Positions 12,702-54,647 of a stretch of 64,000 nucleotides of DNA are shown one piece after another. Location: positions 4,464,001 to 4,528,000 of the forward strand of contig NC_086376.1 in NCBI RefSeq assembly GCF_036588685.1, read 5' to 3'. Numbering within the stretch: position 1 is the stretch's first letter; the number at the start of each line of letters is the position of its first letter. The notes under the pieces were generated by a model that did no database searches, had not been told where the DNA came from, and was given only the letters and a program-made list of their open reading frames with translations. The translations under genes and the position numbers were made by a program. Source of the stretch: Mytilus trossulus (lineage: Eukaryota).

Positions 12702-15700
12702 ATGATTTTGGTTGTCACCCTCATTTTCGCCAGTGCAGCTGGAGTTTTGGCAAGCGGGAAAGGAGGTATAATTTGTTTGTTCAGTAGTGTCTGGTAGTAA
12801 CTGGTGTCTTTCATATGTTAATATATTAGTATAGATTGATGGGGTTCAATTATATATATATATTTTTTGATTAATTACGTCTTTTTCAATAGAGTATGTA
12901 TGTCCTTTAAATTATGTAGAACTTAGGTAGACCAGTGGACTTCTTTTTAACAAAAGGCGTTCAAATTTTTTTTTTTTAGAAAAAGACATTTGTTTTTTGA
13001 ATTCCAAACATGAAAAAAATTGGGAGGCCATTATAAAATTTATAGGAGATGTAAAAATAATAAGTAATTATGAAACGTTATCAAATAGCACTAAACAATA
13101 GATTGACGTTATAACAATTGTAAGGAAATGCATATCTTAGTCAATCCTTCATAATGATCCTAACATAAATATATATAATTTACCTCATCGAATCTTCATA
13201 ATTGTTCTTTTACACCATTTTCTATCCAATATTTCCATACGTATATCTGTGAAAGTACTTTTATTCGTGGGGTATCAATTTTCGTGGTTTTCGTGGATGA
13301 CTTTATCCACGAATTTAAGTGTCCAGCGAAATAAAACAACCATTGTCCAAATCAAGACATGAAAAGATCCCCATGAAGGTTTGACTGCTGATATGATCTA
13401 CAGAATATATTGAATAACGTCAAATCTGAGAATACTTTAATAGCACTCACAGCACTACAACTGCATGCAGGAGTATACCCATTTAATCTTTAAAATAACC
13501 TAAACTGTACAACTTTTGATCTTTTAATTCTCATAAAAAAAAAATTTCGAAAAAAGTGAGATTTCCGTTCTTGATATGCTAGTATGATAAAGTGTTCATT
13601 TTATATCTTCATAGTTCTCGTACATATTGAAAATAATAATGTCATGCTGGGCTTGATTTTGAGAAGAATTATTTGACAATTTAAGATACATTTATGATAC
13701 TGATTTCTTTAGGTGACATATTTATGGCCTTATTAACACCTTTGATGGTTCTTAATCTGTTGATCACTTTATCTTGGTAGTCTCAACTTGGGATAATTGG
13801 TGTTGTCACTACGATTTACACATAGGGTTAATGTTTACTCTTCAATTTCCTTCAATTCAGACTATTTGTAACCTTCGTTTCTAAAGGCTTTAATCATGTT
13901 GATATTACATTTTTTTTTAAACTAAAATCCACGAATTTAAATACCCACGAACATGTAAATATTGCTCAAACCACGAAAATTGATACCCACGAATTAAAGT
14001 ACTTTCACAGTATTTTAATAAATTAAGTCTTTTTAAAATTTAATTGAAACTTGCTTGAATATTTGTTAAAACGAATCACAACATTCTGAAAGAGACGTCA
14101 AAGGGGATTTGATTTACATCATTAAATTGCACTATCACGAAAATTCACATTTTCTATGAAACATTGTCATATCATTCAATTCTTGAAATTAAGATAAATG
14201 CAGATTAATTTGGAATAAGGAAGCAGACTTAAGGAATATGACATCATAACACATTTTTTAAATTGGTTATGATTTGTGAATTTCAACTGAAAAATGCCAT
14301 GGAACGAATTGTTTTTGCAGGAATTAGTTCTGGTGTAAGTGGTGCCATATCTGGTTTCCCAAGTGGATTTCTTAGTAATGTTGGAATTGTAGATGGGAGA
14401 TTCGGTGTTGGTTCAAATGGACAAAGATTAGCTGCAGCATTAGGTGGAACTGTCGCAGGAACTGCAGCCGGACTAGCATCTGCTCTTAGTGGAGGATTAG
14501 CTTCATCTCTTGGCGGAGCAGGAGGATTTTCTGGAACAGTGGGAGGCAATTTCAGAGGCCGATTTGGACCTGGTGTGAGTGCAACTGGTCCAGGTTTGAG
14601 TGGATTTGGTACTGGTGTGAGTGGATTTGGTCCGGGTTCGAGTGCATCTAGCTCCGATATTAGTGGAACTGGCCAAGCAGTCAGTGGGCTATTCACAAGT
14701 GGATTTGGTCCTCGTACTAGCGGATTTGTCACCGGACGAGATGACACAACCAGTAGAGCAGGTTTCATCAACATAAGTTACCAGGCATACATCGGATTGA
14801 TCTCTTATATTTCCGCCCTCGAAAGAACCCTTGCTTTTAATACAGGTGCAAGAATCGGATTTGGAGGAAGCCAGTCTGGAAGTGGATTCTCAGGGATAGT
14901 ATCTGGACCAGGAGGTCAAGGTACTATATCAACTTTCGGTCCAAGTAGCTTTGGAAGTAGTCCTAGTGGCGATCTGTCAATAAACCGCCCTGCAGGCCAA
15001 ATTGTTGCATCTTTCCAACCAAGAGGCTTTGTAAGCAGTCCAAGTGGCGATCTGCCAGTTAGCCGCCCTTCAGGCCAAACTGTTGCATCTTTCCATCCAA
15101 GTGGCTTTGTCAGCAGTCCAAGTAGCGATCTGTCAGTGAGCCGCCCTTCAGGCCAAATTTTTGCATCTTTCCAACCAAGAGGATTTGTCAGCAGTTCAAT
15201 TGGTGATCTGTCAGTTAGCCGCCCTGCAGGCCAAATTGTTGCATCTTTCCAACCAAATGGCTTTGTCAGCAGTCCAAGTGGCGATCTGTCAGTAAGCCGC
15301 CCTTCAGGCCGACTTGTTGCATCTTTCCAACCAAGTGGCTTTGATATTAGTCCAAGTGGCGATTTGTCAGTAGGTGGTCCTGCAGGTCAAGTTAATGTAC
15401 CTATCCAGTCAACAGGTTTTGCTGGTAGAACAAGTGATTCTACCTCAGCAAGTTTGCAGGGGAGTTTTGGAACAGATGGCTCTAGGACATTTGGACCAGT
15501 TTGGAGATTTGGAGTGAATGGTGTCAGAGGTGTTGCAGGTAGGTTTACATTTACCTGTTTAGAAAAAGAAAATTGGTAAAACTTTTAAAACAAAGACGTG
15601 CTCATATTTTATTTCAACACTATCATGGTACACACACGTTCATTTACCTAATAAACTTGTTGTCTCATTCAATATCTTCCTAATCATATATAACACTTGG

Positions 15701-17773
15701 TTTTTTTTTTGCAAATTCGAATTTTTGTATCATAATAAGATAAAATTGTAAAAGAATATATTGTGGACTAATCTATTGTTGAGGATACCCATAGAATAAC
15801 AAATGTTTGATGCATTTCGTGTGGTGTAGTCAACTTTAAGTAACATACATTATTTGTGTTAATAAGGTCTGTTGACAAAACATTAGTTCCCACTAAAAAG
15901 ATGTACTCTCATTTCAACTAAAATCAATATAAATCAAAGCAATATTACCAAGTAACTGAATGACCGATTTATTTCAAATAAATACAAGAAGATGTAAAAA
16001 TGTCAAGTTTTATTGTGTATTTGGCCATGAAATTGTTTGGGCTCATTTTTATTTTTTGCTGAGGTGAACACAAGGAAAAATTTTATGGAAGAGTTTGCTA
16101 TGTATTCTTACAAAATATTAATAGTAAACTATGCTGTCGTGTTAAACACATCACAAAAAAATTAAAAATATCTACATCTTATGGTATTTATTTAATAAAA
16201 ATAACCCAAAACGTTACTTTGTAATATTGAGATCTTTTTAGTAAGAATTCACTTTTACCTGACTGTATATTTCCCCCCGATTTCAGTACCATTTATAGTT
16301 CGCATTGTAATTTACTGCTGACCATATTATAATTCACATGTTGGTGTTCAACTTCATAACTAAAAAATAAAGGATGCAAACAATTTTGTTTTTTGAACAT
16401 TGTGTCTACTCCAATTGTTTTTTTTTTTCAAACATGAGATATGCTTTTGACCAAAGTATTGATCTTTTTCTGTTTTGAGCAAATGCAGTTAAATCTTATA
16501 TAATTTTTAGATCGTAGCGGAGTTAGAATTACAAGCGGAAGAGGAGTTCCAACCACAGACGGAAGTGGATTCAGTGTCACAGACGGAAGTGGAGTCAGAG
16601 TTACAGACGGAAGTGGAGTCAGAATCACAGACGGAAGTGGATTTAGAACCACAGACGGAAGAGGATTCAGAATCACAGGAAGAAGTGGAGTCAGAACCAC
16701 AGACGGAAGTGGATTTAGAATCACTCACGGAAGTGGAGTTGGAATAACAGGGAGAAGTGGATTAAGAGTTAAATCTGGTGGAAGTATGTATAATTTTATA
16801 ATATTTTAATGACAAGGAAATAATATGCAAAGAATGTAACAAAAAACAAATGTTTTTTTTTTACTTTGTTTTCGAAGTTCAAAATCTATTCATTTTAAAT
16901 TCATGTAATGTATAATTAAGAAATTAGAATATCTCTGTAGCATGAGTTCGAATACCCGGCCAGGGAGGAAAAAAAATAGCTTCTGCGAATTTACAGACCT
17001 AACATTTTGGGCTTATATTTAGACGAATTATTAAGAGATAAGTAGATACAAAATAAAGGCAATAGTAGTATGTATACCGCTGTTCGAAATTCATAAATCT
17101 ATAGAGAAAAAACAAATCCGAGTTACAAACTAAAACTGAGGGAAACGCATCAAATATAAGAGAACTACGACACAACAGAAACGCAACATTAAAATGTAAC
17201 ACACACAGAAACGGACTATAATATAACAATTGCAATTTTCCTGACTTGGTACAGGGTTGGTTCTTGGGCTTTGACATTAATACAAACCAAGCAACTTGAT
17301 AACCGTATTTGTTGTAAAATTAATTTACCAAAGAATTGAACAAAATTCTTCAAATATTCCCTATGTTAACATGGATAAGTTTTAGCGAGAAGACAACACA
17401 AAAGAAAAGCAGGTCCCATCCGTCAACGTGAAAAGTCGGGAAAAGCAAACCAGAATTCAACAAAACAATGCACCGCGCATACAATTGAACAAAACGAATC
17501 ACTAAAAATAATACCAATGACGGATTAAATGAACGCGACAAATTAACCTGTTTTGTAATATATTTCCATCAAAGAAGACATCGGACAAATTCACAAATAC
17601 ACTTCCAGTTAACAGTTTTAATTTGTATTTTACGCTTAAATATATCAAAATGAAAATTGGAATTGATTAAGTTATAACATTAACTTTTAAAGTTTGTAAT
17701 TGAATACTTTTTAAGCTCATTTAAGACAGCATATATAATTATGGTTTTATTTGACTTTTCAGGTACCTATTAA
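12702..17773 (+). CDS. Secreted Gly/Ser-rich repetitive structural protein, paralog A (521 aa); coding exons 12702-12765, 14321-15538, 16511-16783, 17763-17773
   Basis: TATAAAA at 12225, non-coding exon 1 donor at 12292; signal peptide MILVVTLIFASAAGVLA then SGKGG; all coding introns phase 1; central INISYQAYIGLISYISALERTL motif; 26-aa and 8-aa repeats; ends VKSGGSTY*; AATAAA at 17857. Confidence 0.85.
13247..14010. mobile_element. MITE in intron of gene A
   Basis: About 45-bp imperfect TIRs CTGTGAAAGTACTTT.ATTCGTGGG.TATCAATTTTCGTGGTTT and its inverse ending ACTTTCACAG, followed by TA. Confidence 0.85.
14956..15420 (+). repeat. Coding 78-bp tandem repeat (26 aa, SSPSGDLSVSRPSGQIVASFQPxGFV), about 6 copies
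   Basis: Units start at 14956, 15034, 15112, 15190, 15268 and 15346 (last one diverged). Confidence 0.9.
16511..16775 (+). repeat. Coding 24-bp tandem repeat (DGSG[VF]R[IVT]T), 11 copies
   Basis: acagacggaagtgga(gtc/ttt)aga(atc/acc/gtt) units fill exon 4 of gene A. Confidence 0.9.
16935..17030 (+). mobile_element. 5'-truncated copy of the tRNA-derived SINE
   Basis: gtagcatgagttcgaatacccggccaggga...tttacagacctaacatt..ggg...tttagacga matches the reverse complement of 57570-57670. Confidence 0.65.
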
Positions 17774-20700
17774 ACCCTTTTGCGAGATGTTTATCTGAAA
17801 GAAATGTCACTTTTTGCTTGTGATCTCCATTTACTTGTATCATAGTTAATTCAGTCAATAAAGAGCTTTATATTTCATAACTCAGTGTTAACTTATTTTT
17901 ATTTGTTGATAAACATTAACGTCATATCTGTTCTATGAATATTATGCTATCAAATACTGTTTAGATTTCAACCAGATAAAACACATTACTGGTCTTATGA
18001 CGGCCTAGTTTTCGTCTCTGATATTGAAATTTTGAAAAAATAACAATATCAAAAACGAACAATGTTAGAAAATAAAACCAAGAGATGCAATACACGAAGG
18101 GGATAAACATCATACTTATGCAAATGACATGTTCATATACCCTCGGCATCTACAGTATTGTAAGAAGTCAATGCCATAAATGAACCCGATAGGTTGCCAA
18201 GTAGTATATCTTGATGGATACTCGGTTCATTGTGGTCAACCTACTCGAAATTTACCATCGTAGTCATGAAACTATTTTAGTAAATACACATAGAACCCAT
18301 TAACTGAACCACCATTTGTATGTATTTAAGAAATTCATTATGCAATGTGTGTTACCCCTTATTAATTGAAATCCCACTATTGCAAAACTTACTGAAAATC
18401 CTCACCTTTTGTAAATTGTCAACCTTAATATTATTCTCAATTATATAACGGTTGCATCACAAGAAACGACTGTGTATACTGTTATTCATAAATAAGATTT
18501 AATGCATAATTTTCTGCATAAGGAAACGCATGTACAAAGTAAGGAATTTGACAACTGTTTCCCTTTTGTTTGATGTATTTGAGCCTTTGATTTTGCCTTT
18601 TGACAATTGCGTTTCCGCTTGAGTTTTTCCTTTGAGTCCGGAATTTTATTTTTATTTGTATTCGAGCTGATGAGTCTCTTGCGGACAAAACATTTGTTTT
18701 GTGCAAATACAACTTTTCAATCCTAGTATCTATGATGTGTTTATTTTTCAATGTTCAAATCGTACTCCTTTAATTTAATTTCAGAATAATGGGTTGAAAA
18801 AAGTATCTATTATTGGTCATATTTTCACATGAGGATGTGTATTTCTGTTCTCTTTGTCAGCATTTAACAGAATTGCATATGAAATTTATTGCCGAAATGC
18901 GTATCTTGTGCACAATAAAAGGTGTATGAAGGAAATAAAGTAATTCATTTCTTGTGCGTTGTCATACGCATGAACATTTTCCCAATGTACTTTAGGCAAA
19001 TACTAATGGTAATGTCTTGTGAACATATCTACTTTTCATAACTTCCTTTCCTTAAATAGATACTAGTGTCACAGCATACGGAGGTAATTGCAAAAGAAAA
19101 ATCCAATTTATCTATAGATAAGTTTCATGCAGCAGTGATACAATGTTTTCTATTTGTTTCCTAAAAAGATTTAAGACAATTTTATCCGGCTGCTAAACAA
19201 CTGTGTGTGTGTGTCACTGTGTGTGCATATGCCTGAAGTTGTATTTTCTGATGTATGTTGTAAAACTTTCAGTTGGTATCAAAATATTTTCATTTGGAAA
19301 AGCATCTCCGTCAAACATTTTATGTTTATGCTTTATGAATAAAAGAACATAACAAGCTTTCACAGTAGGAAATTTAAAGGAAAAAAATTGCAGATTTGTA
19401 CTTATATAAAAAAACAAAAAATAAAAAAAATGGTTTAAGTGTGAACTAATTTGTAGCATCGATGAAGGTGAAGCAATTCAGAAAATGAGGCTTACTTTCA
19501 TGCATTATTCCAACAGATATGTAGTTATACATGTAATAACAAAAGATGTGTTTATGCGACAACAGTATTTGGATTTAGATTTGGAAAATGAAAAAGTTTG
19601 ACAGAATATGGCAAAATTGGAATATGAAAAAATAAAGAAAAAAATATACTGGAGTTTTCAAAATTTTAAACCAAGACAGAAATTATTCAGGCACAGGAAA
19701 GGGAAATTCATATGCTGCAGAAAGACACAAATATACACAAAAAGTAATATTACAAAAATACTGAACTCTGAGGAAAATTCAAAATGGAAAGTCCCTAATC
19801 AAATGATAAAACACCTCAAACGAATGGAAGACACCTCCCATATTCCTGACTTGGTACAGCAATTATTACAGTACAGTTGTAAAGTACAATAAAAAAATGT
19901 GGACAAGTTTATATCTAACAGACTTCAACTTTTCGCACTTAAACGAACAGAAACTACTGATGATAAAACCGATTTTATAAACCAATTAGAAAAAAATCCC
20001 CATTCTTTAATTGGCATTGCAGAATAACACATTTGGAAAAAGGAGCAGGAATGGAATGGCAATTTTTTTAAGACTTGTCTAACCTGAGTTTTGATATCCA
20101 TTTCTATGTACATATTTGACATCTCACCAATTTGTTTCTTTGGTGATTTTTCAATGAATAACAGTTAGTAAAAACAAACTTAAAGGCTATAATTACTTTC
20201 ACGTTCGGATCTTACAAAAGCATTTTTACCTGCTATTATAATTTTAAGTTGAAAAACTAAAAGAAGGTGATGGCTACAGTACCTATAATCTATACTTCAA
20301 AACCATCACGTAAAATATTTGTAAAATTGATACAGAATATTATCAACAGGTATTTATATCTTCGGACGAAATTATTTTAGAAAAAGAACGAGACGTTCTT
20401 TGAAATAACACTGGTTCAATAACTTTCTGCTCAGACACTTAGTTACAGCTGCTATCACTTGATTTCCGAAATTGGAAATGTATATTCCATATGCAGGTGA
20501 AGTTGGTATATACTGCTAAGGTGGGAAAAAATAGAATTTCAAAATTGAAATCGTCTCGTTTGTTATTGATTCTGATACTGAGATGTCGATAATGTAACAT
20601 TCTAGGTTAAATCAGAAAAGTTTTGATTGTTAATGAAAAAATTATCATCAATATATAGGAATGTGAATTTACATGATCCGGGTTCTCTAGAAAAAAACTC

Positions 20701-25006: not shown

Positions 25007-25270
25007 ACCACATTACGTAATAGTTTATTTGACCCTATGTTAAAATTTGCGGGTAAACTTTTTTTAATGTTTGATATCAAAGAATGATTCTGATAAATAT
25101 TTTATCAATAAAAATTATCTTGTAAACGTAGGTAAATATACAACATTTTGTTTTAACATCACGTTAAACACGAACAATAAAACAAACAATTTACATCTAG
25201 GAGTCAGTGTTCGGGTGATCGTTTGTGGTCAGCATAAACAACGGAAAGCACGTACGATCGCTCGTATAAA
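25007..25270 (+). promoter_or_regulatory. Conserved promoter module of gene B
   Basis: GACC-N2-ATTACGTAA (25007-25020), TTTGTGGT (25222), CGGAAAGCACGTAC (25242), TATAAA (25265); non-coding exon 1 donor at 25340. Confidence 0.7.
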
Positions 25271-26328: not shown

Positions 26329-28756
26329 ATGAATACTTTGATTACTTGTGTTGTTCTGCTAGTTGCCAGTTCCTGTACTCATGCCGGTGGCAAGTTCGGC
26401 GGTGGTGGTGGTGGAGGTAAGCAAGTTATCTCCCTTACTCAAGATAAAGATTTTCTAAAATAATGATAACAAAATCAATTAACACAGTGTACCCTTTTTA
26501 AAAGAATTTGATTTAATTTTGAGTGGCTAGTATGGTGTAGTATACAATGATGTTTTCGCAACCTAGAACTCAGGATATTTTTAGATCAGACAAATTATTT
26601 CAAAACTTGTTTTTCATTTCTCGACTTTCCGATTCGAATATCGCTTTTACTGAATTTGTTAAATTATGAACAAAAGCAAAACACGTGCTTTATAACTTGA
26701 TTATAGAGACTATACTATTCAATAATGATTAGAACTTTATCTCTTAAAAATGACTTTCCGAAAAGATGTTTGACTTTGGTTTCACTATGGATGTATTAGA
26801 TTGCTATTCTATGATTATCGATGATTATTTAAAAAAAAACAATATCCAAAACTTTCAAAAATGCTATTGTTTTATCGCGTTTTTCTATCATACTCAGCAT
26901 GCAACCATTTTTGTTTTTAATTATTGCATTTCAATTATTATTTCGTAGAAGTTTGTTATATTTTTCTTCATTTTTCCATTAAATATTTTTATCTAATGTT
27001 TTTTGGTTCAAAATGAATTTTTAATACTCAATTCAAATTTCATGACACACAGTCGTCGAATCTTGCATGATCCTTTTCAACTGTCGTAAAATTCAGTCAT
27101 GTTTTATGGAAGTTCTAGCAGATTTTGTCCTTCATAATTTTTTAATTGCATATTTAATTCCTTCAATAGATTAAGAATTAAACACTTATAATTTGACATT
27201 TCAGGAGGTGGCTCCCTCAGCGGATCTCTACAAGGATCTCTAGCTGGAAGTTTAGGTGGTGGACTCGGAGGTGGTCTCGGAGGTGGTCTCGGAGGTGGTC
27301 TCGGAGGAGGAATCGGTGGTGGAATCGGTGGTGGAATCGGAGGTGGTATCGGCGGAGGTTTTGGCGGCAGTGGAGTTTCTGGATCTCTAAGCGGTTCTCT
27401 AAGTGGAAACTTGGGCGGTGGCGTCGGAGGTGGATTTATTGGCGGTGGTGGTGCCGGCGGATCTATTACCCTCAGCTTCAGTGCCTACCTCAGATTGATG
27501 TACTATGTATCAGCTCTTCAACAAGCTGTTGCAGCAAGTAGTGTAAGCGCTAGCCTATCCGGTGGCTTGACTGGTGGATTTGGTGGTGCAATTGGAGGTG
27601 GATTAGGTGGTGGTCTAGGCGGAGGTATCGGTGGAATCGGTGGTGGTTTCGGTGGAATTGGTGGTGGTTTCGGTGGAATCGGTGGTGGTTCCGGATCTGG
27701 ATCTGGATTTGCTGGAAGATTCGGTGGTGGATTTGCTGGTTCTGTTGGTGGATCTGGAATCGGAGGTGGTTTCGGTTCAGGCTCCGGATTTGCTGGTAGA
27801 TTCGGCGGTGGATTTGCTGGACGTGTTGGAGGTTTAGGAGGTCTTGGCGGAGCAGGGGGCATTGGTGGACTTTCAGGAGGACTCTCTGGTGGACTAAGTG
27901 GTGGCCTTTCTGGTGGTCTAGGTGGTGGTCTTGGAGGAGGTGCTGGATCTAGCATTATGGGTAAATATTTTAAAAACTAATGTTCCATGATAGAAAATAA
28001 AAACACAGTACATCGTCATGACCATTATGTAAACAATTTTAATGCATTAAGTAATAAAAAGAACAAGTGGAAAATTTCAAATATGATTGCAGTACTCAAC
28101 ACGATTGTGAAGGATTTCTTTTTCTCTCAAGAAACCATAGACATTTCCTTGTAAAGATAACCAACTACACCAATATAAACACTAAAGAAAGAGTAGAACA
28201 AAATACACTTCTATTTCAGGAACTCTCGGTGGAAGTTTGAATGCTGGAATCAGCGGCGGAGCTGGTGGCATCGGAGGTGGAAAAGGTGGTAAGTAATTTT
28301 GTAATTATTTTTTTTAACGATAACAAATATTTTATTCAATCATTTCCTGATATATAAATACCTAAGTAGCCCAGGTTAATTTTGTAATTGATTCAAGATT
28401 GTTTTGAAGTAACTTGTACTTCTCTCACATTAAGGGAAAATAAATAAGCTTTGTACCTTTATATGTATTACTTTTAAAGATAATTTAACACCATTTATTT
28501 AAAACACGGAACAGGCTTGCCGATGTTGTATTTGTTAATTTTATTTCGTACATGTATATAAGAAGATATCGATAAATGACTAAATTATAAAACCCTTTGT
28601 CTTCAAATGATTTCAAAATATGACTTTGGTTTTTTTTACGCTTGAAGGTAAATCAAAATTGTATGTGATATTAGTACATAAAGTTGATGTTTGTGTATAA
28701 TTTTGCATTTTAATAACAAATATTTCTCTTCTTCTTTTACAGCAAGTTATTATTAA
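26329..28756 (+). CDS. Secreted glycine-rich structural protein, paralog B (308 aa); coding exons 26329-26416, 27205-27960, 28220-28288, 28743-28756
   Basis: Signal peptide MNTLITCVVLLVASSCTHA then GGKFGG; (GGGL/I)n blocks; ITLSFSAYLRLMYYVSALQQAV motif; ends GGGKGASYY*; all coding introns phase 1; AATAAA at 28849. Confidence 0.9.
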
Positions 28757-38752: not shown

Positions 38753-39046
38753 ACCGTATTACGTAACATCAAAACCTTTTGTTAGATTTTTGAAGAAAAT
38801 GTGTAAAATGACAAATAAACCTGTCTGATTAATATTTGTCAATAAATTGTCATGTAAGCAGAGATATATTTATGTTGTGGTTTAAAACCATGTAAAACAC
38901 GAATTTTACAACCTAGCGTTAAGAAAAGGGAACTGTAAGTGTACTAAATTACAAATTTTATTGAGAAAAATCAATGTATGTATACTACGGTCAAATTTAA
39001 TGCTAGTGCAGTAAAGCGGAAAGCACGTACACTCAGTGATATAAAA
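38753..39046 (+). promoter_or_regulatory. Conserved promoter module of gene C
   Basis: GACC-N2-ATTACGTAA (38753-38766), TGTGGT (about 38876), CGGTCA (38988), CGGAAAGCACGTAC (39017), TATAAAA (39040); exon 1 donor at 39121. Confidence 0.7.
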
Positions 39047-39881: not shown

Positions 39882-42391
39882 ATGAATACTTTTATAACCG
39901 TTCTCCTAGTGTCCGTTGCCTTTGCAAATGCTGTACCTAGATATGGCGGCGGTAAAGGAGGTTAGTTGTTATTATTTACAAAATATGATTTTTGCTCTAT
40001 TTCTCAAAACAAAGGACCAACTTTTATATCTTTATGAAAATACTTTAGTATTGCAATTGTTTCGCTTGGATTTAGTTCTATACAAATCGGTATAAACGAA
40101 TGCGGATTTTATTTTGGGATAAGATTGCATGAAAGTGAAACATAAGTCTCTGATATAACGTCAAAATACCGATTTTTTCTTATAAAGTGAGAAATAATTT
40201 TATCATCTTGTCTGTAAAAAATAATCACAAAAAGGATAATCAAAGAAATATGGCACAGATTCGAATTACAATATCGATATAAAAAGAAAGTTAGAAAGAA
40301 AGTTTATAGAAAAATGACTGTAAATTATCTAGAAAAATGTGTTTTTCTATCATTTAATATCGTTGTATAATTATTTCAGTAGGTGGATCAATCAGTGGAT
40401 CAATTGATGGATCTATTGGCGGAAATGTTGGAGGTGGCTTCGGAAGTGGACTTTCTAGTTCTCTCAGTGGTGCTCTTAGCGGAAACTTGGGTGGTGGCAT
40501 TGGAAGCGGAATTGGCGGCGTAGGTGTATCTAACTCTCTCAATGCTGCTCTTAGTGGAAATTTGGGAGGTAGTCTAGGAGGTGGATTCGGCGGAAGTGGA
40601 CTATCTAGTTCACTCAACGCTGCTTTAAGTGGAAACTTGGCCGGAGGCATTGGAGGTGGTCTTGGAGGTAGTGGAATTTCTAATTCTCTTGCTGGTGCTC
40701 TAAGCGGTAATTTGGGAGGTAGTCTAGGAGGTGGCCTCGGTGGTAGTGGACTATCTAGTTCTCTCAATGCTGCTTTAAGCGGAAATTTGGGAGGAAGTCT
40801 CGGAAGCGGCATTGGAGGCAGTGGCATTTCAGGTTCTCTGGCTGGTGCTCTAAGCGGAAATTTGGGAGGTGGAATTAGTGGTGTTGGTGCCGGCAGATCT
40901 ATCTCCATCAGCATTAGTGCATACCTTAGATTGATTTCCCACATCTCTGCTCTTCAACAAACCATCTCTGCCAATACCTTAGCAGCAAGTTTGAGCGGTG
41001 GAATCAGTGGTGGAATCGGCGGAGGAATTGGTGGTGGAGTAGGAGGTGGATTCACTGGTGGTGCTGGATCTAACTTTGCTGGACAATTTGACGGTGGATT
41101 TGCTGGTTCTGTTGGCAGATCTGGATTCGGAACTGGAGTAGGAAGCAGCGGATTTGCCGGACAATTCGGAAGTGGATTTAGTGCACAAAGTGGAAATATC
41201 GGAGGTATTGGAGGAGCCGGTGGTTTGAGTGGAGGACTTTCCGGAGGATTAAGTGGTGGAATTTCTGGTGGACTAGGAGGTGGTATTGGAAGTGGTGCTG
41301 GAGGAATCAGCAGTGCAAGCCTTCAAGGTCAGTATTCTATGTAAAAAAGTTAAACAAATTTAAACAGGAATCCTTAAATTTTAAATTTTGCGATACTTAA
41401 TATGTATAACGGAACGATATTAGTAGGGATATATAAAAAAACATTTTATTAAGTGATGTAAATAGCATTAATCATTGAATCAATATCGACTTAAGATCGA
41501 GTACGATTTTCCTTGTTCTTTTTCCCCCGTTTTACGGGGATGGGGGTTGGGGTGCAGTTCAAACATGAGATTGCCTTGAATCGAACGCCATCGGTACTTT
41601 TATGTAGACGAACGTTAACACTGGCGTAACTAATTATGAACCTGGAATATGTAATCAATGATCTGCTGATTGCCACAGTTGTCCCATTGAGTAAAATTAC
41701 GCGTTGTTGTGATTCTATTATCCTTTTTAACTTCATCTATAATCTTTATGTCGTTTTCAGCTGCTCTTCAAGGAAGTGTAAGCAGTGGATTCGGAGGCAG
41801 ATCTGCTGGAAAAGGTAAGCCTTCAAAAAAGTCTGAAATATAACAAGATATAAGGATTTTTAAAAGTTTTTATCAGACATAGTAACATGCACAGTGTACT
41901 CGATAGTAAGGGCCAATTTACTATTATCGATTTTGTAGTCATTAAGAAAAACACGAAAGATGATAAAACCTACAATTCAAATATTAAACGGTCTTTGTTA
42001 TTTTCTCTTTAACTTTTAACTTTTTAAGAAATTTTACATATTTTCGAAGATAATGGAATGTTGTGAAATGTTGAATCAATAAACAATGGACCTGAAGACA
42101 CCTCTTCAAACAAGTTTACATAGTGCTTTGCATATGATTGTTTTGACCTTCACATATAAAAACAACCAACATAAGAAATATATAATTATTTGAAATGACA
42201 CACATAGGAGAAATACCAGAATAATAAGTAAACGTATAATTTGAAAATAAACTTTCAGGGATCAAAAAGTGATAAGTAAAGTTTTATTAAGTGTAATCTA
42301 TGTTTATTTTTGATAAAAGTGTATGCAAAATTTATGTATTTTTCAATTAGACATACTAATATATATCATTTATCTTGTAGGAGCATACTAA
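39882..42391 (+). CDS. Secreted Gly/Ser-rich structural protein, paralog C (363 aa); coding exons 39882-39960, 40380-41327, 41761-41814, 42381-42391
   Basis: Signal peptide MNTFITVLLVSVAFANA then VPRYGGGKG; about six 25-aa GGSGLSSSLNAALSGNLGGSLGGGL repeats; ISISISAYLRLISHISALQQTI motif; ends RSAGKGAY*; phase-1 introns; AATAAA at 42475. Confidence 0.9.
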
Positions 42392-46845: not shown

Positions 46846-47054
46846 TGAATCGCCACTCCTTCTATTTTCACAACATTTTACGAATATACAGTAGATATTA
46901 TTTCTCATAAGACTATTGAGAAGAAAAAAGAGAAAGAATACGCATAAGAACTTTTATTTTATTAAAAAAGTCATTTTGAAGAGAAATTCCGAAACATATT
47001 TTACGCACGGCCCCGCAGGTAAAATGATTGTTTATCTTAATATAAAACGCATCA

Positions 47055-47880: not shown

Positions 47881-47899
47881 ATTTATTTTCAAAAATTCA

Positions 47900-50510
47900 A
47901 CATGAAAATCTCCGATAGATGATTTCTCATGGTCCTAAGTTTAGAGAACCCCAATACATCAATTGGAACCATAACTTCAAAATAATTATGGATTTCATTG
48001 AGGACTACGCCAGGGCATGGGCTAAGCGAGAAGAAGTTGAACTGGACACTTTGTCAGAATGGGTTAAAACAATCAGGTCTCTGATAAAACATCGAATTCA
48101 CAAGTTGAAAAACTGTGTGAACGATCGACCAAAGTCCGTTTTCAGAGACAAAGAGGCCATGAAATGTCTATCAAATCTTCATGATAAGTATGTTGTTGTT
48201 CCTGCGGACAAAGCTTCAAATAATATTGTCTTTGTATGTAAATCGTATTACTACGAATGTTTTTTAAAAGAATTGGGTATAAAGGAGCACTCAGGTAATC
48301 CCACATACAAAGACATATCATTTGACAAGGATGAGATTTTGGCAAATCATAAGTCCTTCATGGCTTCAATAAACATTACATTGAACACCAAATCAGAGGA
48401 CTTACCTTGTTTGTATTGGATACCAAAGCTTCATAAAATTCCGTACAAACAACGGTATATTGCTTGCTCATCTTCATGTTCCACTAAAGAATTGCCGATT
48501 AGATTGACTAAAATTCTGTTCGCAGTGAAAGAGGGTCTTCAGAAATACTGTGAAACTGTTTACTCGCGTAGTGGTATAAACCATATGTGGATTCTTAAAA
48601 ATTCTAAAGAACTTCTAGACATGTTTAAATCTCTTTCTTTTTCTGAAATTAGTTCCATCAAAACTTTAGATTTTCCAACCCTGTATACCACCACTCCCCA
48701 TGTGAAATTGAACAATTGCCTAAAAGAAATAATCCACAATGCCTTTCAACCTAAAGATGGTAGCATACGCTATAAATTTATTACTTTAGAATTTCATAAG
48801 GCATATTTCGTTAATAATGACAAACAAAAAGGTAAAATATACTACACAGAAGAACAAGTGATCAGTATGCTGGAGTGTCTCATCGACAACATATTTGTTG
48901 AGTTTGGGAACAAACTGTGCGCCTCTTCTTGCCGACCTCTTCTTATTTTCATATGAATCGGAGTTCCTCCAGACACTTGTCAAAAACAAGAGGATCAAAG
49001 AAGCCAGATTATTTAATTTCACTTTCAGATATATTGATGATGTTCTTTCCATAAACAATCCGAACTTTTCTGATTGGGTTCCATTAATATTTCTCACAGA
49101 ACTACTGATTAAAGAAACAACAGACACGGCTTCCTCCGCCCCATTTTTAGACTTATATCTCGAATTTGACTTACACAGTCATCTCAGTACCAGAATTTAT
49201 GACAAACGAGACGATTTTAATTTTAAAATTATAAATTTCCCCCACCTTAGTAGCAATATACCAACTTCACTTGCATATGGGATATATATATTTCCCAACT
49301 TATTCGATATTCAAGAGCTTGCAGCTCCTACTTAGACTTTGTAAAACGTCATCAGTGCCTGAGTAGAAAGTTGATGAACCAGGGGTATGTCAAAGAACGT
49401 CTTGTCCTTTTCCTAAAATCGGAAGGTACCAAGACCTTATTAATCAATATTCCATATCAACTTCTCAAATAATACACGATGGTCTTGATGTATAAATTCT
49501 GCGTACTGATGTTGTATATCATCTTAACAACGTTTTGTTGTTCTTTCGTTTGTCTTTGTTCTATTATTAATATTACTTTTACTGTTGAATGGTTTTATGT
49601 GATATCCGTTTGACGTGGCTCGGTACTTATACATCTCGTCAACGTGTTTGTATTGGCTTTCATTTTTTAGTGGTTTGTTTTGTATATGCTACTTTTTGTA
49701 TTTCTTTTGTTCTTATAACGTGACTCTGTACTTTAAAAGATCCCGTCAGTATGATATTGTTCTATTATATGTCATGGTATATTTCTATTATGAAGTACTA
49801 TATACGTTGAACCACAAACGTCAAAAGCATTCAATCGCGTAGTGGAATCAACTGTTTTTGGATTCTTATAAATTCTACATATAACTTTTGGACTAGTTTA
49901 AATCTCGGTCTATTTCTGAAATTTATTCTTACATACTTTTGATTTTTTAACCTTGAATATTGCCTATGTAAGTTTTAAAATTGATTGTATGCACATTGAA
50001 CATTTATATGACGTATAAAAATTTCTGACGTCAGACACTCAAATCAATCAATGTATTCGTAGATAGTAGATGTGTTTGTGTTCTGTTAAATTGTTCCTTT
50101 TAAAATTGTTATACGATGATGACTGATGTACCCATATTTATACTATTTTATTAATTGTGTCTGTTTAATTAACGCATCAATGTAAATATAACGGAATTTG
50201 ATGAGACTGTCATTAAAGTAAGAGGGTTAGCGCTTTGAATCAGGTTTAATACACCATTTTCTACATTTGAAAATGCCGGTACCAAGTCAGGAATATGACA
50301 GTTTTTGTCCATTCGTTTTTGATGCGTTTTGTCAGTTGATTTTTCCATGTGATTATGGACTTTCCGAATTGATTTTCCTCTAAGTTCAGTATTTTTGTGC
50401 TTTTACATTTTTCTACATGGAAGACCTGTTGGTAACCTCCTGCTGTTGTTTTTTCTATGGTTGGGTTGTTGTCTCTTTGACACATTTCCCATTTCCATTT
50501 TCATTTTTAT
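47900..50510 (+). mobile_element. Penelope-like retrotransposon, 5'-truncated reverse-transcriptase pseudogene plus 3' region
   Basis: Motifs GPKFREP, VVPADKASNN, YWIPKLHK, MWILKNS, TLDFPTLYT, GTNCAPLLADLFL, FRYIDDVLSINN, YDKRDDFNF, SNIP..AYGIY. Frameshifting deletion at about 48907 removes the QxxGxPM part of RT motif B; further frameshifts near 49290. No endonuclease is visible after the RT. Confidence 0.9.
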
Positions 50511-50892
50511 GAAAACTTACAAATGCAAATGTTGATCAAATCGTTCTAAGAGAATACATGAAAGATATAACGAAAACAGATCAACGAAATTAAATCCATT
50601 ACTACAACCACTTAAAAGAAGTGTACCCGATTAAATTAATAAAATCTTATTACATAAAACTTTGAACAGTTTTATTTCAAGAATTGAAATACAACTGTTT
50701 AAAGTTTTATGCAATAAGCATAATCACAAAATGACGAAATCAAAAAATGTAAACATTTCGGAATTGAAATGGCGACTTACTCATTGACAAGTAAAAGACC
50801 GGCAGATCGTGAACTATTCCCTTTATATACGACGACGACCATTCGCTATTACACATCAATTTGAAAAAACATCGCATTACAATGAATAAATG

Positions 50893-51181
50893 ACCATATT
50901 ACGTAATATTTTATAGTATTGTTTTAGGAAATGTGCGAAATGGCAAATAAAACTGTCTGATTCATATTTATCAATAAATTGTCATGTAAGCAGAAGTAAA
51001 TTTAAATTGTGGTTTTTAAAATAACGTTAAACATTAGTTTTGAAACTAAGTGTTATGAATATAAAATGACTAGTGTGCTGAACATCAAACTTTACTAGAA
51101 AAAAATTAAATTATCTACATCAGGGTCAACACTAATGTGCAGGCAAGAATGCGGAAAGCATGTTTACACAGATGTATAAAA
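50893..51181 (+). promoter_or_regulatory. Conserved promoter module of gene D
   Basis: GACC-N2-ATTACGTAA (50893-50906), TGTGGT (about 51008), GGGTCA (51123), CGGAAAGCA (51152), TATAAAA (51175); exon 1 donor at 51245. Confidence 0.7.
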
Positions 51182-51457
51182 GAGAATAATTGCTGATTAT
51201 TTATACATAGATACCATTGATATCACCGAGAGACAGAACACCAGGTATAACACTTTCAAATTAATAATAATAAGCTCAAGTAAATATCTTTAAACAATGC
51301 TTCACATTTATAAACATTTAGGACATATAATAAGACTGGTTATATATCTCAACATTATTATTCATAATTATTTCCTATGCGTCTTGAATAAGATTTAATA
51401 ACAAAAAGTATTTATGTATAAATGTTTATTAATATCTTGTAATCTTTTACAGTCAGG

Positions 51458-54400
51458 ATGAATACTTTTATTACCTTAGTCCTTGTGTCCGTTTCCTTTG
51501 CAAATGCTGTACCCAGATATGGCGGCGGTAAAGGAGGTTAGTTTTTTAAATTTACATAATATGATTTTTGCTCTATTTTACCAAACTAAGGAAAAATTCG
51601 AAAAGTTTGAATATTTTTTTAAGTGTTTTGGTGATCTATAATTAATTCCTGAAAAAGTTCTTTAAAAAAATAAAAATATCGATTTGTGATGATCTGATTT
51701 CATATTCAATTACTTGATTAAGTTTTACGACGAATTTAACATGACTTAGATTAATGATTGATTATGGTTTGATGAACGTTCAAGGGCTTATATATCGTTC
51801 AAATACAGTGCAGTAACATGAATTAAATACAGGAATTGATAAATTATAAAAATTTAGCCAACCTGGTCTTTAACCTTACAACTGGATAATTATGGATTCC
51901 CCATTTGGTTGTAGCAGGGAATCCATAACATGTTAAGAGCGTTGAACTCTTCACGACTAAAAGCACGTTCGAATCATAATGCTTTAAAAGGTGCCGTTTT
52001 CAAATTTGTACGGTTTCAAATACTCTTGTTAGAACTTTCAAAAATAGTCTACCCCCAAATGTCAGAATAAAAATATTCTCTTTTTTTAATATCTTTATGT
52101 AAATACTTCGGTATGGCAATTGCTTTGCTGGGATTTAGTTCTATACAAATCTGTTAAAACCAATGCGGATTTTATTTTTGGATAAGTTTGTACGACAGTG
52201 GAACGTAAGTCATTGATATTACGTATAAATATCGATCTTTCTAATGAAGTGAGAAATAGTTTTAGATTATAATAATCATCACAAAAAGAATAATTATAGA
52301 AATATGGCACCAATTTTATTTCCAAAATCGATAACATAAGACAGTTTAAAAAAAAGAAATTTTATAGAAAAATGATTGAAATTAACTAGAAAAGAAAAAA
52401 ATTCAAAACAACAAAATGTGTTTTTCTATCATTTAATACCGTTGTATAAATTATTTCAGTAGGTGGATCAATCAGTGGATCAATTGATGGATCTATTGGC
52501 GGAAATGTTGGAAGTGGCTTCGGAAGTGGACTTTCTAGTTCTCTCAGTGGTGCTCTAAGCGGAAACTTGGGTGGTGGCATTGGAAGCGGAATTGGCGGCG
52601 TAGGTGTATCTAACTCTCTCAACGCTGCTCTTAATGGAAATTTGGGAGGTAGTCTAGGAGGTGGATTCGGCGGAAGTGGACTATCCAGTTCACTCAACGC
52701 TGCTTTAAGTGGAAACTTGGCCGGAGGCATCGGAGGTGGTCTTGGCGGTAATGGAATATCCAATACTCTTGCTGGTGCTCTAAGTGGAAATTTGGGAGGT
52801 AGTCTAGGAGGTGGTCTCGGCGGTAGTGGACTATCTAGTTCTCTCAACGCTGCTTTAAGCGGAAATTTGGGAGGAAGTCTAGGAAGCGGTATTAGCAGCA
52901 GTGGCATTTCAGGTTCTCTGGCTGGTGCTCTAAGCGGAAATTTGGGAGGTGGAATTAGTGGTGTTGGTGCCGGCAGATCTATCTCCATCAGCATTAGTGC
53001 ATACCTTAGATTGATTTCCTACATCTCTGCTCTTCAACAAACCATCTCTGCCAATACCTTAGCAGCAAGTTTGAGCGGTGGAATCAGTGGTGGAATCAGT
53101 GGAGGAATCGGTGGTGGAGTAGGAGGTGGATTCATTGGTGGTGCTGGATCTAACTTTGCTGGACAATTTGACGGTGGATTGGCTGGTTCTGTTGGCAGAT
53201 CTGGGTTCGGAACTGGAGTAGGAAGCAGCGGATTTTCTGGACAATTCGGAAGTAGATTCAGTGCACAAAGTGGAATCGGAGGTATTGGAGGAGCCAGTGG
53301 TTTGAGTGGAGGACTTTCCGGAGGATTAAGTGGTGGCATTTCTGGTGGACTAGGAGGTGGTATTGGAGGTGGTGCAGGAGGAATCAGCAGTGCTAGCCTT
53401 CAAGGTCAGTATTCTTCTATGTAAAAAAGTTATACCAATTGAAACAGGAATTCTAAAATATGAAATTTTGCGATACTTTATATGTATGAAGAAACGGAAT
53501 ATGAAATGGACATCTGTTAGTGACTGCTCCAGTAGTACATGTATATATAATCCTGTTAATGACACATTTCAAACTTATGATGAAATATTAGCATAATAAA
53601 CAGCCTGATATATTAGAATAGATAGAAACAAAACACTTAATTAAGTGTTGTAAATAACATTATTTATTTAATAAATACCGACTTAAGATCGATAACGATT
53701 TCCCTCGTTCTTATTTTTTCCCGTTTTTTTACAGGGATGGGGTTTGGGTGCAGTTCAACCATTTGATTGCCTTGAATCGGATGCCATCGATTAATCTTAT
53801 TCAGACGCGCGTCAGCACTGGCGTAACTAATTATGAATCTGGAATGTGCAACCAATGATTCGCTGTATGGTACAGTTTTTCAATTGAGTAAATTACGCGT
53901 TGTTGTGTTTCTATTATTCTTTTTAACTTCATCTATTATCTTATGTCGTTTTCAGCTGCTCTTCAAGGAAGTGTAAGCAGTGGATTCGGAGGCAGATCTG
54001 TTGGAAAAGGTAAGTTTTAAAAAAGTTTTAGATATAACAAGATATATAGATATAAAGATTTAAGATTTAATCAGACATAGAACAAGGACAGTGTTCTCGA
54101 TAGTTCGGGTCAATTTACCTAATATTTTTTAAAAGAAAAACACGAAAGTTATTAATAATCATTGGCAATATTATATCTTATTATTTATAATATGCTCAAA
54201 AAGAAAAAGTGATCAATTACAGTGCACATTAATTTAAATTGATCTCGCCATTTCGGGGTCAAACTCTATTCGAAGATAATGAAATCTTATGAAATGTTGA
54301 TATTAAAAAAAATAATTTAACAGACATCTCTTCAGTTTTATATCAATCTGAACAAAGAAGTTTACATAGTGCTTTGCATATTATTGTATTAACATTCACA

Positions 54401-54647
54401 TATAAAAACAACCAACATAAGAAATATACAATTATTTGAAATGACACACATAATATATATATATAGAAATACCAAAATAATAAGTAAACGTATGATTTGA
54501 AAATAAATTATCAGGGATAAAAAAGTGATAAGTAAAGTTTTATTTAGTGTAATCTATGTTTAGTTTGATAAAAGTGTATGCAAAATATAATGTATTTTTC
54601 AATAAGACATACTAATATATATCATTTGTTTTGTAGGAGCATACTAA
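51458..54647 (+). CDS. Secreted Gly/Ser-rich structural protein, paralog D (362 aa), near-identical to C; coding exons 51458-51536, 52460-53404, 53956-54009, 54637-54647
   Basis: MNTFITLVLVSVSFANA-VPRYGGGKG...ISISISAYLRLISYISALQQTI...RSVGKGAY*; same exon phases as C; AATAAA at 54731. Confidence 0.9.

What the first reader, a model, noticed from the sequence alone, without database searches (positions are those of the whole stretch)
12702..54647. Tandem family of four secreted Gly-rich proteins with a telechelic design: exactly one Lys at each mature end and a terminal Tyr
Seen after splicing: each mature protein has only two lysines, one within about 8 residues of the N-terminus (SGKGG, GGKFG, YGGGKG, YGGGKG) and one just before the C-terminus (VKSGGSTY, GGKGASYY, AGKGAY, VGKGAY). 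There is no Cys, and Tyr is confined to the ends and the central motif, although the interior repeats differ completely between A, B and C/D. Established: Lys/Tyr (lysyl-oxidase, DOPA-quinone, dityrosine) cross-links sclerotise molluscan extracellular materials, and shematrins are Gly-rich shell proteins ending in basic residues plus Tyr. Inference: these are end-linked network precursors (long flexible chain, reactive ends, central oligomerisation hub) for periostracum, shell, ligament or byssus. I do not recognise them as a named family.
Basis: partly seen in the sequence, partly recalled or inferred. Interest (0 to 1): 0.85.

Follow-up and report, generated by a model that had tools for sequence, protein, structure and literature searches.

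The report
Mussel secreted glycine-rich protein gene cluster
The window holds four real members of an unnamed, Mytilus-restricted tandem family (eleven copies in all) of secreted, mostly disordered glycine/serine-rich proteins with one conserved central helix and a conserved lysine-plus-tyrosine C-terminal end, probably building blocks of an extracellular material, but their tissue and chemistry are still untested.

Summary
Each has a signal-peptide exon, one large Gly/Ser-rich exon, a small exon and a short terminal exon, and every intron is phase 1. Under these models, proteins A-D have two lysines each, at mature position 3 or 8 and 3-6 residues from a C-terminal Tyr. They have no Cys, and Tyr occurs only at the ends and in the central motif.

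Three corrections:
- **Family size:** eleven tandem loci spread over about 207 kb, not four genes.
- **N-terminal Lys:** not invariant. It is Arg in two paralogs and absent in two others and in the M. edulis and M. galloprovincialis RefSeq orthologs.
- **C-terminal Lys...Tyr:** invariant in all ten intact copies.

Exons are far better conserved than introns, and dN/dS is 0.11-0.29, so these are constrained coding genes. Structure prediction gives disordered arms around one central helix. A three-copy model of that helix narrowly passes the self-association mark.

No Pfam, NCBIfam, PDB or literature match exists; RefSeq calls one ortholog "IniB-like".

The scan also noted similar mirror-image Tyr/Lys termini on other DNA of this genome (unchecked).

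Verdict: a new variant of lineage-specific silk-like matrix proteins, of moderate interest.

The parts
12702..12765 (+). Gene A exon with ATG, signal peptide and N-terminal stub (SGKG + split Gly)
   Evidence: donor G|GTATAA, phase 1
14321..15538 (+). Gene A large exon (1218 nt): Gly/Ser/Phe-rich arms around the central motif
   Evidence: 78-nt x5.5 repeat at 14941-15372
14734..14877 (+). Gene A central conserved motif segment
   Evidence: alignment A2; own-genome profile hit 79.6 bits
16511..16783 (+). Gene A third exon: ten 8-residue repeats, ends with the only C-terminal Lys
   Evidence: 24-nt x10.1
17763..17773 (+). Gene A terminal coding piece (split Ser, Thr, Tyr, stop); AATAAA at 17857-17862
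   Evidence: inferred, no reads
26329..26416 (+). Gene B exon with ATG, signal peptide, GGKFG stub
27205..27960 (+). Gene B large exon (756 nt), 51% Gly overall
27432..27575 (+). Gene B central conserved motif segment
28220..28288 (+). Gene B small exon ending in Gly-Lys-Gly
28743..28756 (+). Gene B terminal coding piece (split Ala, Ser, Tyr, Tyr, stop); AATAAA at 28849-28854
38790..38853 (+). Gene C putative promoter-proximal block and very short non-coding first exon ending at a TCAT|GTAAGC donor (inferred)
   Evidence: block conserved upstream of C, D, F, G, H, I, J; every ATG lies 5-8 nt after an acceptor-like site
39882..39960 (+). Gene C exon with ATG, signal peptide, VPRYGGGKG stub
40380..41327 (+). 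Gene C large exon (948 nt): 25-residue repeats x5.7, central helix, Phe/Gln-containing Gly-rich C arm
   Evidence: AlphaFold2
40868..41011 (+). Gene C central motif: predicted amphipathic helix and modelled self-association interface
41761..41814 (+). Gene C small exon (54 nt) ending in the C-terminal Lys
   Evidence: 98% identical to D against 80-83% for the flanking introns
42381..42391 (+). Gene C terminal coding piece (split Gly, Ala, Tyr, stop); AATAAA at 42475-42480
50922..50985 (+). Gene D putative promoter-proximal block and short non-coding first exon (inferred)
51458..51536 (+). Gene D exon with ATG, signal peptide, VPRYGGGKG stub
52460..53404 (+). Gene D large exon (945 nt), 96% identical to C
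52948..53091 (+). Gene D central conserved motif segment
53956..54009 (+). Gene D small exon ending in the C-terminal Lys
54637..54647 (+). Gene D terminal coding piece (split Gly, Ala, Tyr, stop); AATAAA at 54731-54736

Best explanation
These are four members (A-D) of a Mytilus-restricted tandem family of eleven loci. The genes encode secreted, basic, almost charge-free Gly/Ser-rich proteins of 220-500 residues, most likely structural components of an extracellular material or gel.

**Shown**
- The gene architecture is shared by all copies.
- The coding sequence is under purifying selection.
- The protein has a signal peptide and two low-complexity arms whose repeats differ between subfamilies.
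- It has one conserved central motif of about 30 residues and a conserved C-terminal Lys-x(1-3)-Tyr end.
- Lys is excluded from the interior.

**Predicted**
- The arms are disordered.
- The central motif is an amphipathic helix with a Tyr/Leu/Ile/Leu/Ile heptad core that packs into a parallel, in-register bundle.

**Inferred**
- Bundling gathers several chains into a multi-arm unit.
- The C-terminal Lys/Tyr end, and in most but not all members an N-terminal Lys (with Tyr or Phe), then serves as the covalent cross-linking or anchoring site.
- The chemistry could be tyrosinase-made DOPA-quinone with Lys, lysyl oxidase, peroxidase dityrosine, or transglutaminase with the interior Gln residues. 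The result would be an end-linked, rubber-like or gel network.

The C-terminal end is the constrained one. The N-terminal end is variable.
For: **Gene models and symmetry**
- Phase 1 throughout, reproduced in A-D and in F-K.

**Constraint**
- Exons 91-100% identical against introns 80-83% for C versus D.
- Exons 83-91% against introns about 50% for C versus H. This includes the 54-nt exon and the terminal piece.
- dN/dS 0.11-0.29 on the large exon.

**Orthologs**
- RefSeq proteins of M. edulis and M. galloprovincialis end in the same Lys-Gly-Ala-Ala-Tyr across the same exon joints.

**Secretion**
- N-terminal hydrophobic stretch with small residues at -3 and -1 in every copy.

**Structure**
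- Disorder plus one helix.
- Self-association model: score 0.33, best of 3 controls 0.01, runs agree in at least 80% of contacts, partner pLDDT at least 63, contacts in register (26-26, 29-29, 33-33).
- Invariant motif columns I12, A18, Y19, L22 and L29 are among the interface residues.

**Lysine and terminus**
- Interior 1 Lys against 87 Arg, although 69 of the Arg codons are AGA, one step from AAA. Ends 15 Lys against 8 Arg.
- C-terminal Lys and terminal Tyr in 10 of 10 intact copies.

**Class**
- Glycine reaches 34-61% in an 80-residue window. Together with the signal peptide this meets the published definition of silk-like structural proteins (PMC4944945).
Against: - No expression data of any kind. 
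- Tissue, material and any modification or cross-link are untested.
- The N-terminal Lys is Arg in G and H. It is absent in J, K and the two RefSeq orthologs, so a strict two-ended design is not general.
- The complex score passes by only 0.01. That calibration used two copies and did not test disordered or predicted chains.
- Amphipathic helices are easily laid side by side by such models.
- Tyr is only about 1% of residues, unlike known quinone-tanned mussel proteins.
- The paralogs are not independent samples for the Lys statistics.
Confidence: 0.45

Rival explanations
1. Non-covalent gel, mucus or coacervate protein. The chains assemble through the central helix and weak Gly/Phe/Leu contacts. 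The terminal Lys/Tyr act through charge, cation-pi or surface adhesion (Lys next to Tyr/DOPA, as in mussel foot proteins) rather than as covalent network junctions.
For: - Net charge is only +2 to +21 and the chains are almost free of acidic residues.
- The arms are predicted disordered.
- The N-terminal Lys can be replaced by Arg (G, H) or lost (J, K). That fits a charge or adhesion role better than Lys-specific chemistry.
- A gill-specific secreted Gly-rich protein of unknown function is highly expressed in another mytilid (PMC5549309). Its relation to this family is unknown.
Against: - Strict retention of Lys, never Arg, at the C-terminal site in 10 of 10 copies, while Arg is used 87 times in the interior. 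This points to something Lys-specific.
- A terminal Tyr is also invariant.
Confidence: 0.25
2. The conserved C-terminal Lys-Gly-(Ser/Ala)-Ala-Tyr is a sorting or processing signal, not a structural junction. It could be recognised in the regulated secretory pathway or trimmed after secretion.
For: - The tail is encoded by its own small exons and is the best-kept part outside the central motif.
- Another first-stage note in this genome reports prohormone-style Gly-Lys/Arg ends on structural-looking proteins (s1-826770, unchecked).
Against: - There is no dibasic site.
- The upstream Arg seen in C, D and F is missing in G, H and J, so no conserved convertase-type motif exists.
- Nothing else in the proteins resembles a propeptide.
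Confidence: 0.1
3. No special design. The end residues are simply inherited with the short flanking exons, while the large exon evolves by repeat expansion. Interior Lys is missing only because low-complexity Gly/Ser/Leu repeats rarely produce it.
For: - The interior is built of recently expanded repeats that differ between subfamilies.
- The N-terminal site does drift: Lys, Arg or none.
- The paralogs are not independent.
Against: - The interior has 111 Asn and 69 AGA Arg codons, each one step from Lys, yet only one Lys in 3016 residues.
- A is unalignable with C outside the central motif (35% identity) yet keeps Lys at position 3, Lys six residues from the end and a terminal Tyr.
- dN/dS is well below 1.
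Confidence: 0.15
4. Mis-modelled or silent loci. The Gly-rich frames are decaying pseudogenes or the small terminal exons are not used.
For: - No read evidence was obtainable.
- One copy outside the window (E) has frameshifts and no recognisable signal exon.
- Public protein sets hold only three models of the family.
Against: - Nine copies have intact frames, canonical splice sites and symmetric phases.
- Exons are much better conserved than introns.
- dN/dS is 0.11-0.29.
- AATAAA lies 84-93 nt after each stop.
- RefSeq orthologs use the same exon joints.
Confidence: 0.05

Closest known systems
Silk-like structural proteins (SLSPs) of metazoan biomaterials (McDougall, Woodcroft & Degnan 2016, PMC4944945)
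   Same: Has a signal peptide, no other hydrophobic segment, and at least 25% Gly in an 80-residue window (34-61% here). It is lineage-restricted, tandemly duplicated, repetitive and predicted disordered.
   Different: SLSP is a class defined by composition, not a homologous family. It says nothing about the conserved central helix or the Lys/Tyr ends, which are the distinctive features here.
Shematrins and KRMPs of pearl oysters (Yano et al. 2006; described in PMC3896809)
   Same: Secreted, basic, Gly-rich mantle-type proteins that end in basic residue(s) followed by Tyr. They occur as multigene families.
   Different: - Shematrins have Gly-Tyr-rich XGnX repeats and an RKKKY/RRKKY/RRRKY-type tail.
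- Here Tyr is about 1% of residues.
- The tail here is a single Lys, then Gly/Ile, 0-2 Ser/Ala residues and Tyr.
- A central helix motif is present here.
- No sequence similarity was found.
Abductin, the scallop hinge-ligament rubber (Cao, Wang & Bayley 1997; summarised in PMC13052691)
   Same: A secreted molluscan Gly-rich random-coil elastomer candidate, with cross-linkable Tyr confined to a short terminal domain. Gene B has GGIGG/GFGG runs reminiscent of the abductin decapeptide.
   Different: - Abductin is 136 residues and Gly/Met-rich, with an Ala-rich N-terminal domain carrying two Cys.
- Here there are 0-2 Met and no Cys.
- These proteins are much longer, with a central helix and the reactive residues at the C-terminus.
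Mussel byssal preCOLs, and the epidermal cross-bridging proteins loricrin and small proline-rich proteins (from my own knowledge of Waite, Qin & Coyne 1998 and Steinert et al. 1998)
   Same: The working principle matches: a flexible or extensible middle with cross-linking residues concentrated in the end domains. These are His/DOPA in preCOLs and Lys/Gln for transglutaminase in loricrin and SPRs. Loricrin also has Gly/Ser-rich loops.
   Different: No collagen domain, no His-rich ends and no Gln/Lys-rich end domains. Here each end has one Lys at most. Oligomerisation would come from a short coiled coil, not a collagen triple helix.
Mycobacterial IniB (the name RefSeq gives the M. edulis ortholog XP_071167856.1)
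   Same: Gly-rich composition only.
   Different: No NCBIfam or Pfam match. The name is a composition-driven artefact of automatic annotation.

Membership tests
Silk-like structural proteins (SilkSlider class, PMC4944945) | N-terminal signal peptide | tested here: met
   Read from the sequence. Each has Met, a short polar start, 12-14 hydrophobic residues and small residues at -3 and -1. SignalP itself was not available.
Silk-like structural proteins (SilkSlider class, PMC4944945) | At least 25% Gly within an 80-residue window of the mature protein | tested here: met
   Maximum 34% (A), 61% (B), 48% (C), 44% (D). Definition.
Silk-like structural proteins (SilkSlider class, PMC4944945) | No transmembrane segment | tested here: inconclusive
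   TMHMM was not available. The only long hydrophobic run outside the signal peptide is the amphipathic central motif, which has Ser/Gln/Arg interspersed.
Shematrin | Gly-Tyr-rich XGnX repeat domains | tested here: not met
   3-5 Tyr per 289-504 residues, none in the repeats. The repeats are Gly/Ser/Leu/Ala/Asn or Gly/Ile/Phe.
Shematrin | C-terminal RKKKY / RRKKY / RRRKY-type signature | tested here: not met
   The tails carry a single Lys, and Tyr follows 2-5 residues later.
Shematrin | Expression at the mantle edge and presence in the prismatic layer | not testable with these tools
No proteome paper matched the motif.
Abductin | Gly/Met-rich GGFGGMGGGX repeats | tested here: not met
   0-2 Met per mature protein. 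Feature taken.
Abductin | Ala-rich N-terminal domain with two Cys and two Tyr | tested here: not met
   No Cys in mature A-D. The N-terminal stub is 5-10 residues.
IniB-like (RefSeq name of the ortholog) | Sequence match to a curated IniB model | tested here: not met
   No NCBIfam or Pfam family at E <= 0.1 or 1 for the ortholog or the window's exons.
The family itself (central-motif Gly-rich proteins of Mytilus) | Central motif profile (48 positions, alignment A2) | tested here: met
   A, B, C and D score 78-84 bits. There are eleven hits in the whole genome, all on one strand of one 207-kb stretch. Among 1.84 billion representative proteins there were five hits at E <= 0.001: two Mytilus models, two metagenome fragments, and one weak partial match to an unrelated repetitive protein.

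The most novel reading that the evidence does not exclude
This would be a natural multi-arm, end-functional macromer. A short parallel coiled coil gathers three or so chains. Each chain contributes two long entropic Gly-rich arms whose tips carry a single Lys/Tyr cross-link site. Oxidative curing would then give an end-linked elastomeric network in a mussel material such as periostracum, ligament, byssus or shell framework. Such proteins would have escaped shell and byssus proteomics because B, C, D, F and H yield only one or two tryptic peptides of measurable size.
Probability: 0.22. Interest if true: 0.75.

Novelty: new variant of a known kind. Interest (0 to 1): 0.5.

Why it matters
Molluscs make many lineage-specific Gly-rich secreted proteins, so the kind is familiar. 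This family combines three features that are not described together:
- arms whose repeats are free to change;
- one conserved helix that may act as an assembly hub;
- an invariant single-Lys, terminal-Tyr C-terminus, with Lys otherwise excluded.

If the ends are true cross-link sites, the family would be a simple genetic model of an end-linked protein network, and a template for designed protein elastomers or hydrogels.

It would also point to a blind spot of trypsin-based matrix proteomics.

If the proteins turn out to be a plain gel or mucus component, the finding is an ordinary lineage-specific gene family.

Tried and rejected
**Family and structure searches that found nothing**
- Pfam and NCBIfam scans of the large exons and of the RefSeq ortholog: no family.
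- PDB profile search with the central motif: nothing at E <= 1.
- ESM Atlas: no usable hit for the C exon, and only a 0.80 chance-level hit for the ortholog.

**Homologue searches**
- C exon: two Mytilus models only, because the candidate list was saturated by Gly-rich words.
- Central 43 residues alone: nothing reached E <= 0.1.
- Gene A exon: nothing.
- Metagenome scan with the motif profile: 262 pattern matches, none confirmed.

**Literature**
- Full-text search for six motif strings: no paper.
- Searches on Mytilus Gly-rich shell, periostracum, byssus and ligament proteins gave comparators but no match.
- "IniB" plus Mytilus gave only noise.

**Rejected leads**
- A weak own-genome hit on another contig (C3 about 22.357 Mb) is an unrelated Gly-Ser-Ile-Asn repeat without the motif.
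- A bacterial-code or prokaryotic reading was never plausible: the sequence is AT-rich and has introns.

**Tools unavailable**

**Spliced models**
- All searches and folds used single-exon references.
- Residue positions along the models were counted inside scripts by walking the exons in order. No joined sequence was printed or saved.

Full report
**1. What is in the sequence**

The window is AT-rich (about 31% G+C) with four G+C- and G-skewed islands. These coincide with four long + strand open frames rich in Gly and Ser: 14242-15576, 27192-27977, 40358-41341 and 52450-53421.

Upstream of each lies a short exon that starts with ATG and encodes a typical signal peptide followed by a few mature residues. 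Reading the DNA at the boundaries gives canonical acceptors and donors. Anchoring the exons by those sites gives four-exon coding models:

| Gene | Exon 1 | Exon 2 | Exon 3 | Exon 4 |
|---|---|---|---|---|
| A | 12702-12765 | 14321-15538 | 16511-16783 | 17763-17773 |
| B | 26329-26416 | 27205-27960 | 28220-28288 | 28743-28756 |
| C | 39882-39960 | 40380-41327 | 41761-41814 | 42381-42391 |
| D | 51458-51536 | 52460-53404 | 53956-54009 | 54637-54647 |

- Every intron is phase 1 and every internal exon is a multiple of three.
- AATAAA follows the stop by 84 nt in A, C and D and by 93 nt in B.
- Each ATG sits 5-8 nt after an acceptor-like site.
- A block about 1 kb upstream is conserved between subfamilies and contains a TCAT|GTAAGC donor. 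A very short non-coding first exon is therefore likely.
- The M. galloprovincialis RefSeq model carries an N-terminal extension before the same Met, which fits an upstream exon.

**2. The observation**

Counting along the exons:
- Lys is at mature positions 3 and 498 of 504 (A), 3 and 284 of 289 (B), 8 and 343 of 346 (C), and 8 and 342 of 345 (D).
- The last residue is Tyr (Tyr-Tyr in B).
- The mature chains have no Cys.
- Tyr occurs only in the N-terminal stub of C and D, in the central motif and at the C-terminus.
- The interior repeats are unrelated between A, B and C/D.

So the description is correct.

It is not a chance effect of composition. In nine modelled paralogs the interior (3016 residues) has one Lys against 87 Arg, although 69 of those Arg codons are AGA and there are 111 Asn, all one step from Lys. 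The 18 terminal residues per protein hold 15 Lys against 8 Arg (Fisher p = 5e-12; paralogs are not independent).

**3. The family is larger, and its ends are not equally conserved**

Searching the whole assembly with the exons and with a 48-position profile of the central motif finds eleven loci. All lie on the + strand of one contig, between 4,476.7 and 4,683.6 kb, and none lies elsewhere. The window is positions 4,464,001-4,528,000 of that contig.

I fetched the rest of the cluster and modelled F-K in the same way. Copy E has frameshifts and no recognisable signal exon, so it is probably a pseudogene.

- **C-terminus.** All ten intact copies end with one Lys, then Gly (Ile in one, Ser-Gly-Gly in A), then 0-2 Ser/Ala/Thr residues, then Tyr or Tyr-Tyr.
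- **N-terminus.** The site varies: Lys in A, B, C, D, F and I; Arg in G and H; no basic residue in J and K.
- **Extra Lys and Cys.** J and K have a Lys and a Cys inside the central motif.
- **Orthologs.** The only annotated full-length relatives, M. edulis XP_071167856.1 ("isoniazid-induced protein IniB-like") and M. galloprovincialis XP_076101221.1, are J-type. They show the same pattern: no N-terminal Lys and a C-terminal Lys-Gly-Ala-Ala-Tyr.

**4. Are these real, constrained genes?**

I could not obtain reads. The indirect evidence is consistent:
- C and D exons are 91-100% identical, while their introns are 80-83% identical with many gaps.
- Between C and H, exons are 83-91% identical and introns about 50%. 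This holds for the 54-nt exon and the terminal piece too.
- Nei-Gojobori dN/dS on the large exon is 0.11-0.29 in eight paralog pairs.
- The RefSeq orthologs join the same exons.

**5. Structure**

- AlphaFold2 on the large exon of C, using the eleven-sequence family alignment, gives mean pLDDT 36.5. There is a single confident element, a helix at residues 178-208 with pLDDT 70-82.
- This helix is the conserved motif. Its invariant columns are Ile12, Ser15, Ala18, Tyr19, Leu22, Ser27, Ala28 and Leu29 of the 48-residue segment.
- The hydrophobic residues follow a heptad pattern: Tyr19, Leu22, Ile26, Leu29, Ile33, Asn36, Ala40. The helix is preceded by an alternating Ser-Ile stretch.
- Three copies of the segment scored 0.33 against a best control of 0.01. 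The mark was reached by 21 of 30 proteins solved as pairs of one chain and 0 of 23 solved as single chains. On eukaryotes it was reached by 17 of 29, and by only 1 of 7 without an older solved relative.
- The runs agree in at least 80% of contacts and the partner pLDDT is at least 63.
- The pass margin is 0.01, and that calibration used two copies. Contacts are in register and parallel.
- I take this as weak support for a self-associating hub, not as proof.

**6. What it most likely is**

The proteins meet the published definition of silk-like structural proteins: signal peptide plus at least 25% Gly in 80 residues (PMC4944945). Here the values are 34-61%. They are basic (net +2 to +21), nearly free of acidic residues, and restricted to Mytilus as far as the databases show.

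The motif profile found five proteins among 1.84 billion representatives. Two are Mytilus models. Two are short metagenome fragments resembling gene A. One is a weak partial match to an unrelated repetitive protein.

My best reading (confidence about 0.45) has three steps:
- A secreted matrix or gel protein assembles through the central helix.
- This exposes flexible arms.
- The arms are tied in at a Lys/Tyr C-terminal end, and in most members also at an N-terminal Lys.

The enzyme could be tyrosinase, lysyl oxidase, peroxidase or transglutaminase. The interior keeps 3-16 Gln, including two in the motif of most members. Nothing here discriminates between these enzymes.

The rivals are a non-covalent gel or adhesion role for the ends, a sorting or processing signal, inheritance without function, and silent loci. 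They are weighed in the rival list.

**7. Comparison with known families**

- **Shematrins.** They share only "Gly-rich, basic, Tyr at the very end". Their Gly-Tyr repeats and RKKKY-type tail are absent.
- **Abductin.** It shares the idea of a Gly-rich random-coil rubber with Tyr in a terminal domain. It is Met-rich, short and has Cys.
- **PreCOLs, loricrin and small proline-rich proteins.** By my own knowledge of that literature, they share the principle of reactive ends on a flexible middle, but none of the sequence features.
- **IniB.** The RefSeq name is compositional.
- **Motif in print.** No paper in the library contains the motif strings.

**8. A practical point**

Trypsin would cut B, C, D, F and H into pieces of 63-176 residues, plus only one or two peptides of 7-35 residues. 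Absence from published shell and byssus proteomes therefore carries little weight.

**9. Handling of spliced models**

Residue positions were counted in scripts by walking the exons in order, without printing or saving a joined sequence.

**10. Verdict**

The architecture and the C-terminal end hold. The strict two-ended Lys rule does not. Chemistry and tissue are untested.
- This is a new variant of a known kind, the lineage-specific silk-like matrix proteins.
- Interest is 0.5.
- An earlier first-stage note reports similar mirror-image Tyr/Lys termini on another piece of this genome (s1-821093). I could not check it. If true, such ends may be a recurrent device in Mytilus.

Noticed in passing
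beyond the window: contig C4 4,530,800-4,683,600 (loci L013, L014, L017, L020, L021, L023, L032): Seven further family members (E-K) continue the tandem array on the same strand. E is frameshifted and lacks a recognisable signal exon. G and H have Arg at the N-terminal Lys site. J and K are short forms with Lys and Cys inside the central motif.
   Followed up: yes
window 38741-38981 and 50873-51113 (about 1 kb upstream of the ATG of C and D): A block conserved between subfamilies (C, D, F, G, H, I, J) holds an AAATAAA box and, about 40 nt later, a TCAT|GTAAGC donor. It is probably the promoter plus a very short non-coding first exon. Conservation continues about 60 nt into the presumed intron. 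BLAST found no such block for A or B.
   Followed up: partly
window 28777-28800, 42413-42436, 54669-54692: A short element of the form GACGCC...GATGAAC is shared by the 3' untranslated regions of B, C, D, E and F, even though the B and C coding repeats differ. AATAAA lies exactly 84 nt after the stop in A, C and D.
   Followed up: partly
window 1678-1923 and 3169-3759, minus strand: Two open frames look, from memory only, like exons of a CREB3/OASIS-type bZIP factor: an acidic Ser/Gln-rich activation region and the start of a basic region. Pfam found nothing at E <= 0.01.
   Followed up: partly
window 47919-49335, plus strand: Two overlapping long open frames (345 and 146 aa) lie between genes C and D, with no Gly bias and no Pfam match. 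They may be a remnant of a mobile element.
   Followed up: partly
window 55771-57555: A tandem array with a period of about 566 nt, visible as repeated ORF triplets. An earlier follow-up in this scan calls it a hammerhead-ribozyme retrozyme-like element (s1-820520).
   Followed up: no
window 45764-46244: A 240-nt tandem repeat, two copies, 94% matches, in the C-D intergenic region.
   Followed up: no
window 6967-7066: A run of 100 N, either an assembly gap or a masked stretch.
   Followed up: no
L019 (contig C3 22,356,582-22,358,006, minus strand): Open frames made of Gly-Ser-Ile-Asn/Lys/Glu hexamer-like repeats gave weak hits to the N arm of gene C. They have no central motif and are unrelated low complexity.
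   Followed up: yes
proteins P0004 and P0005 (JGI metagenome contigs of 1.0-1.5 kb): Two short "hypothetical proteins" from environmental metagenomes carry a gene-A-like central motif and Phe-Gln-Pro-Ser-Gly repeats. They are presumably mussel DNA in an environmental sample. Their source could not be traced.
   Followed up: partly
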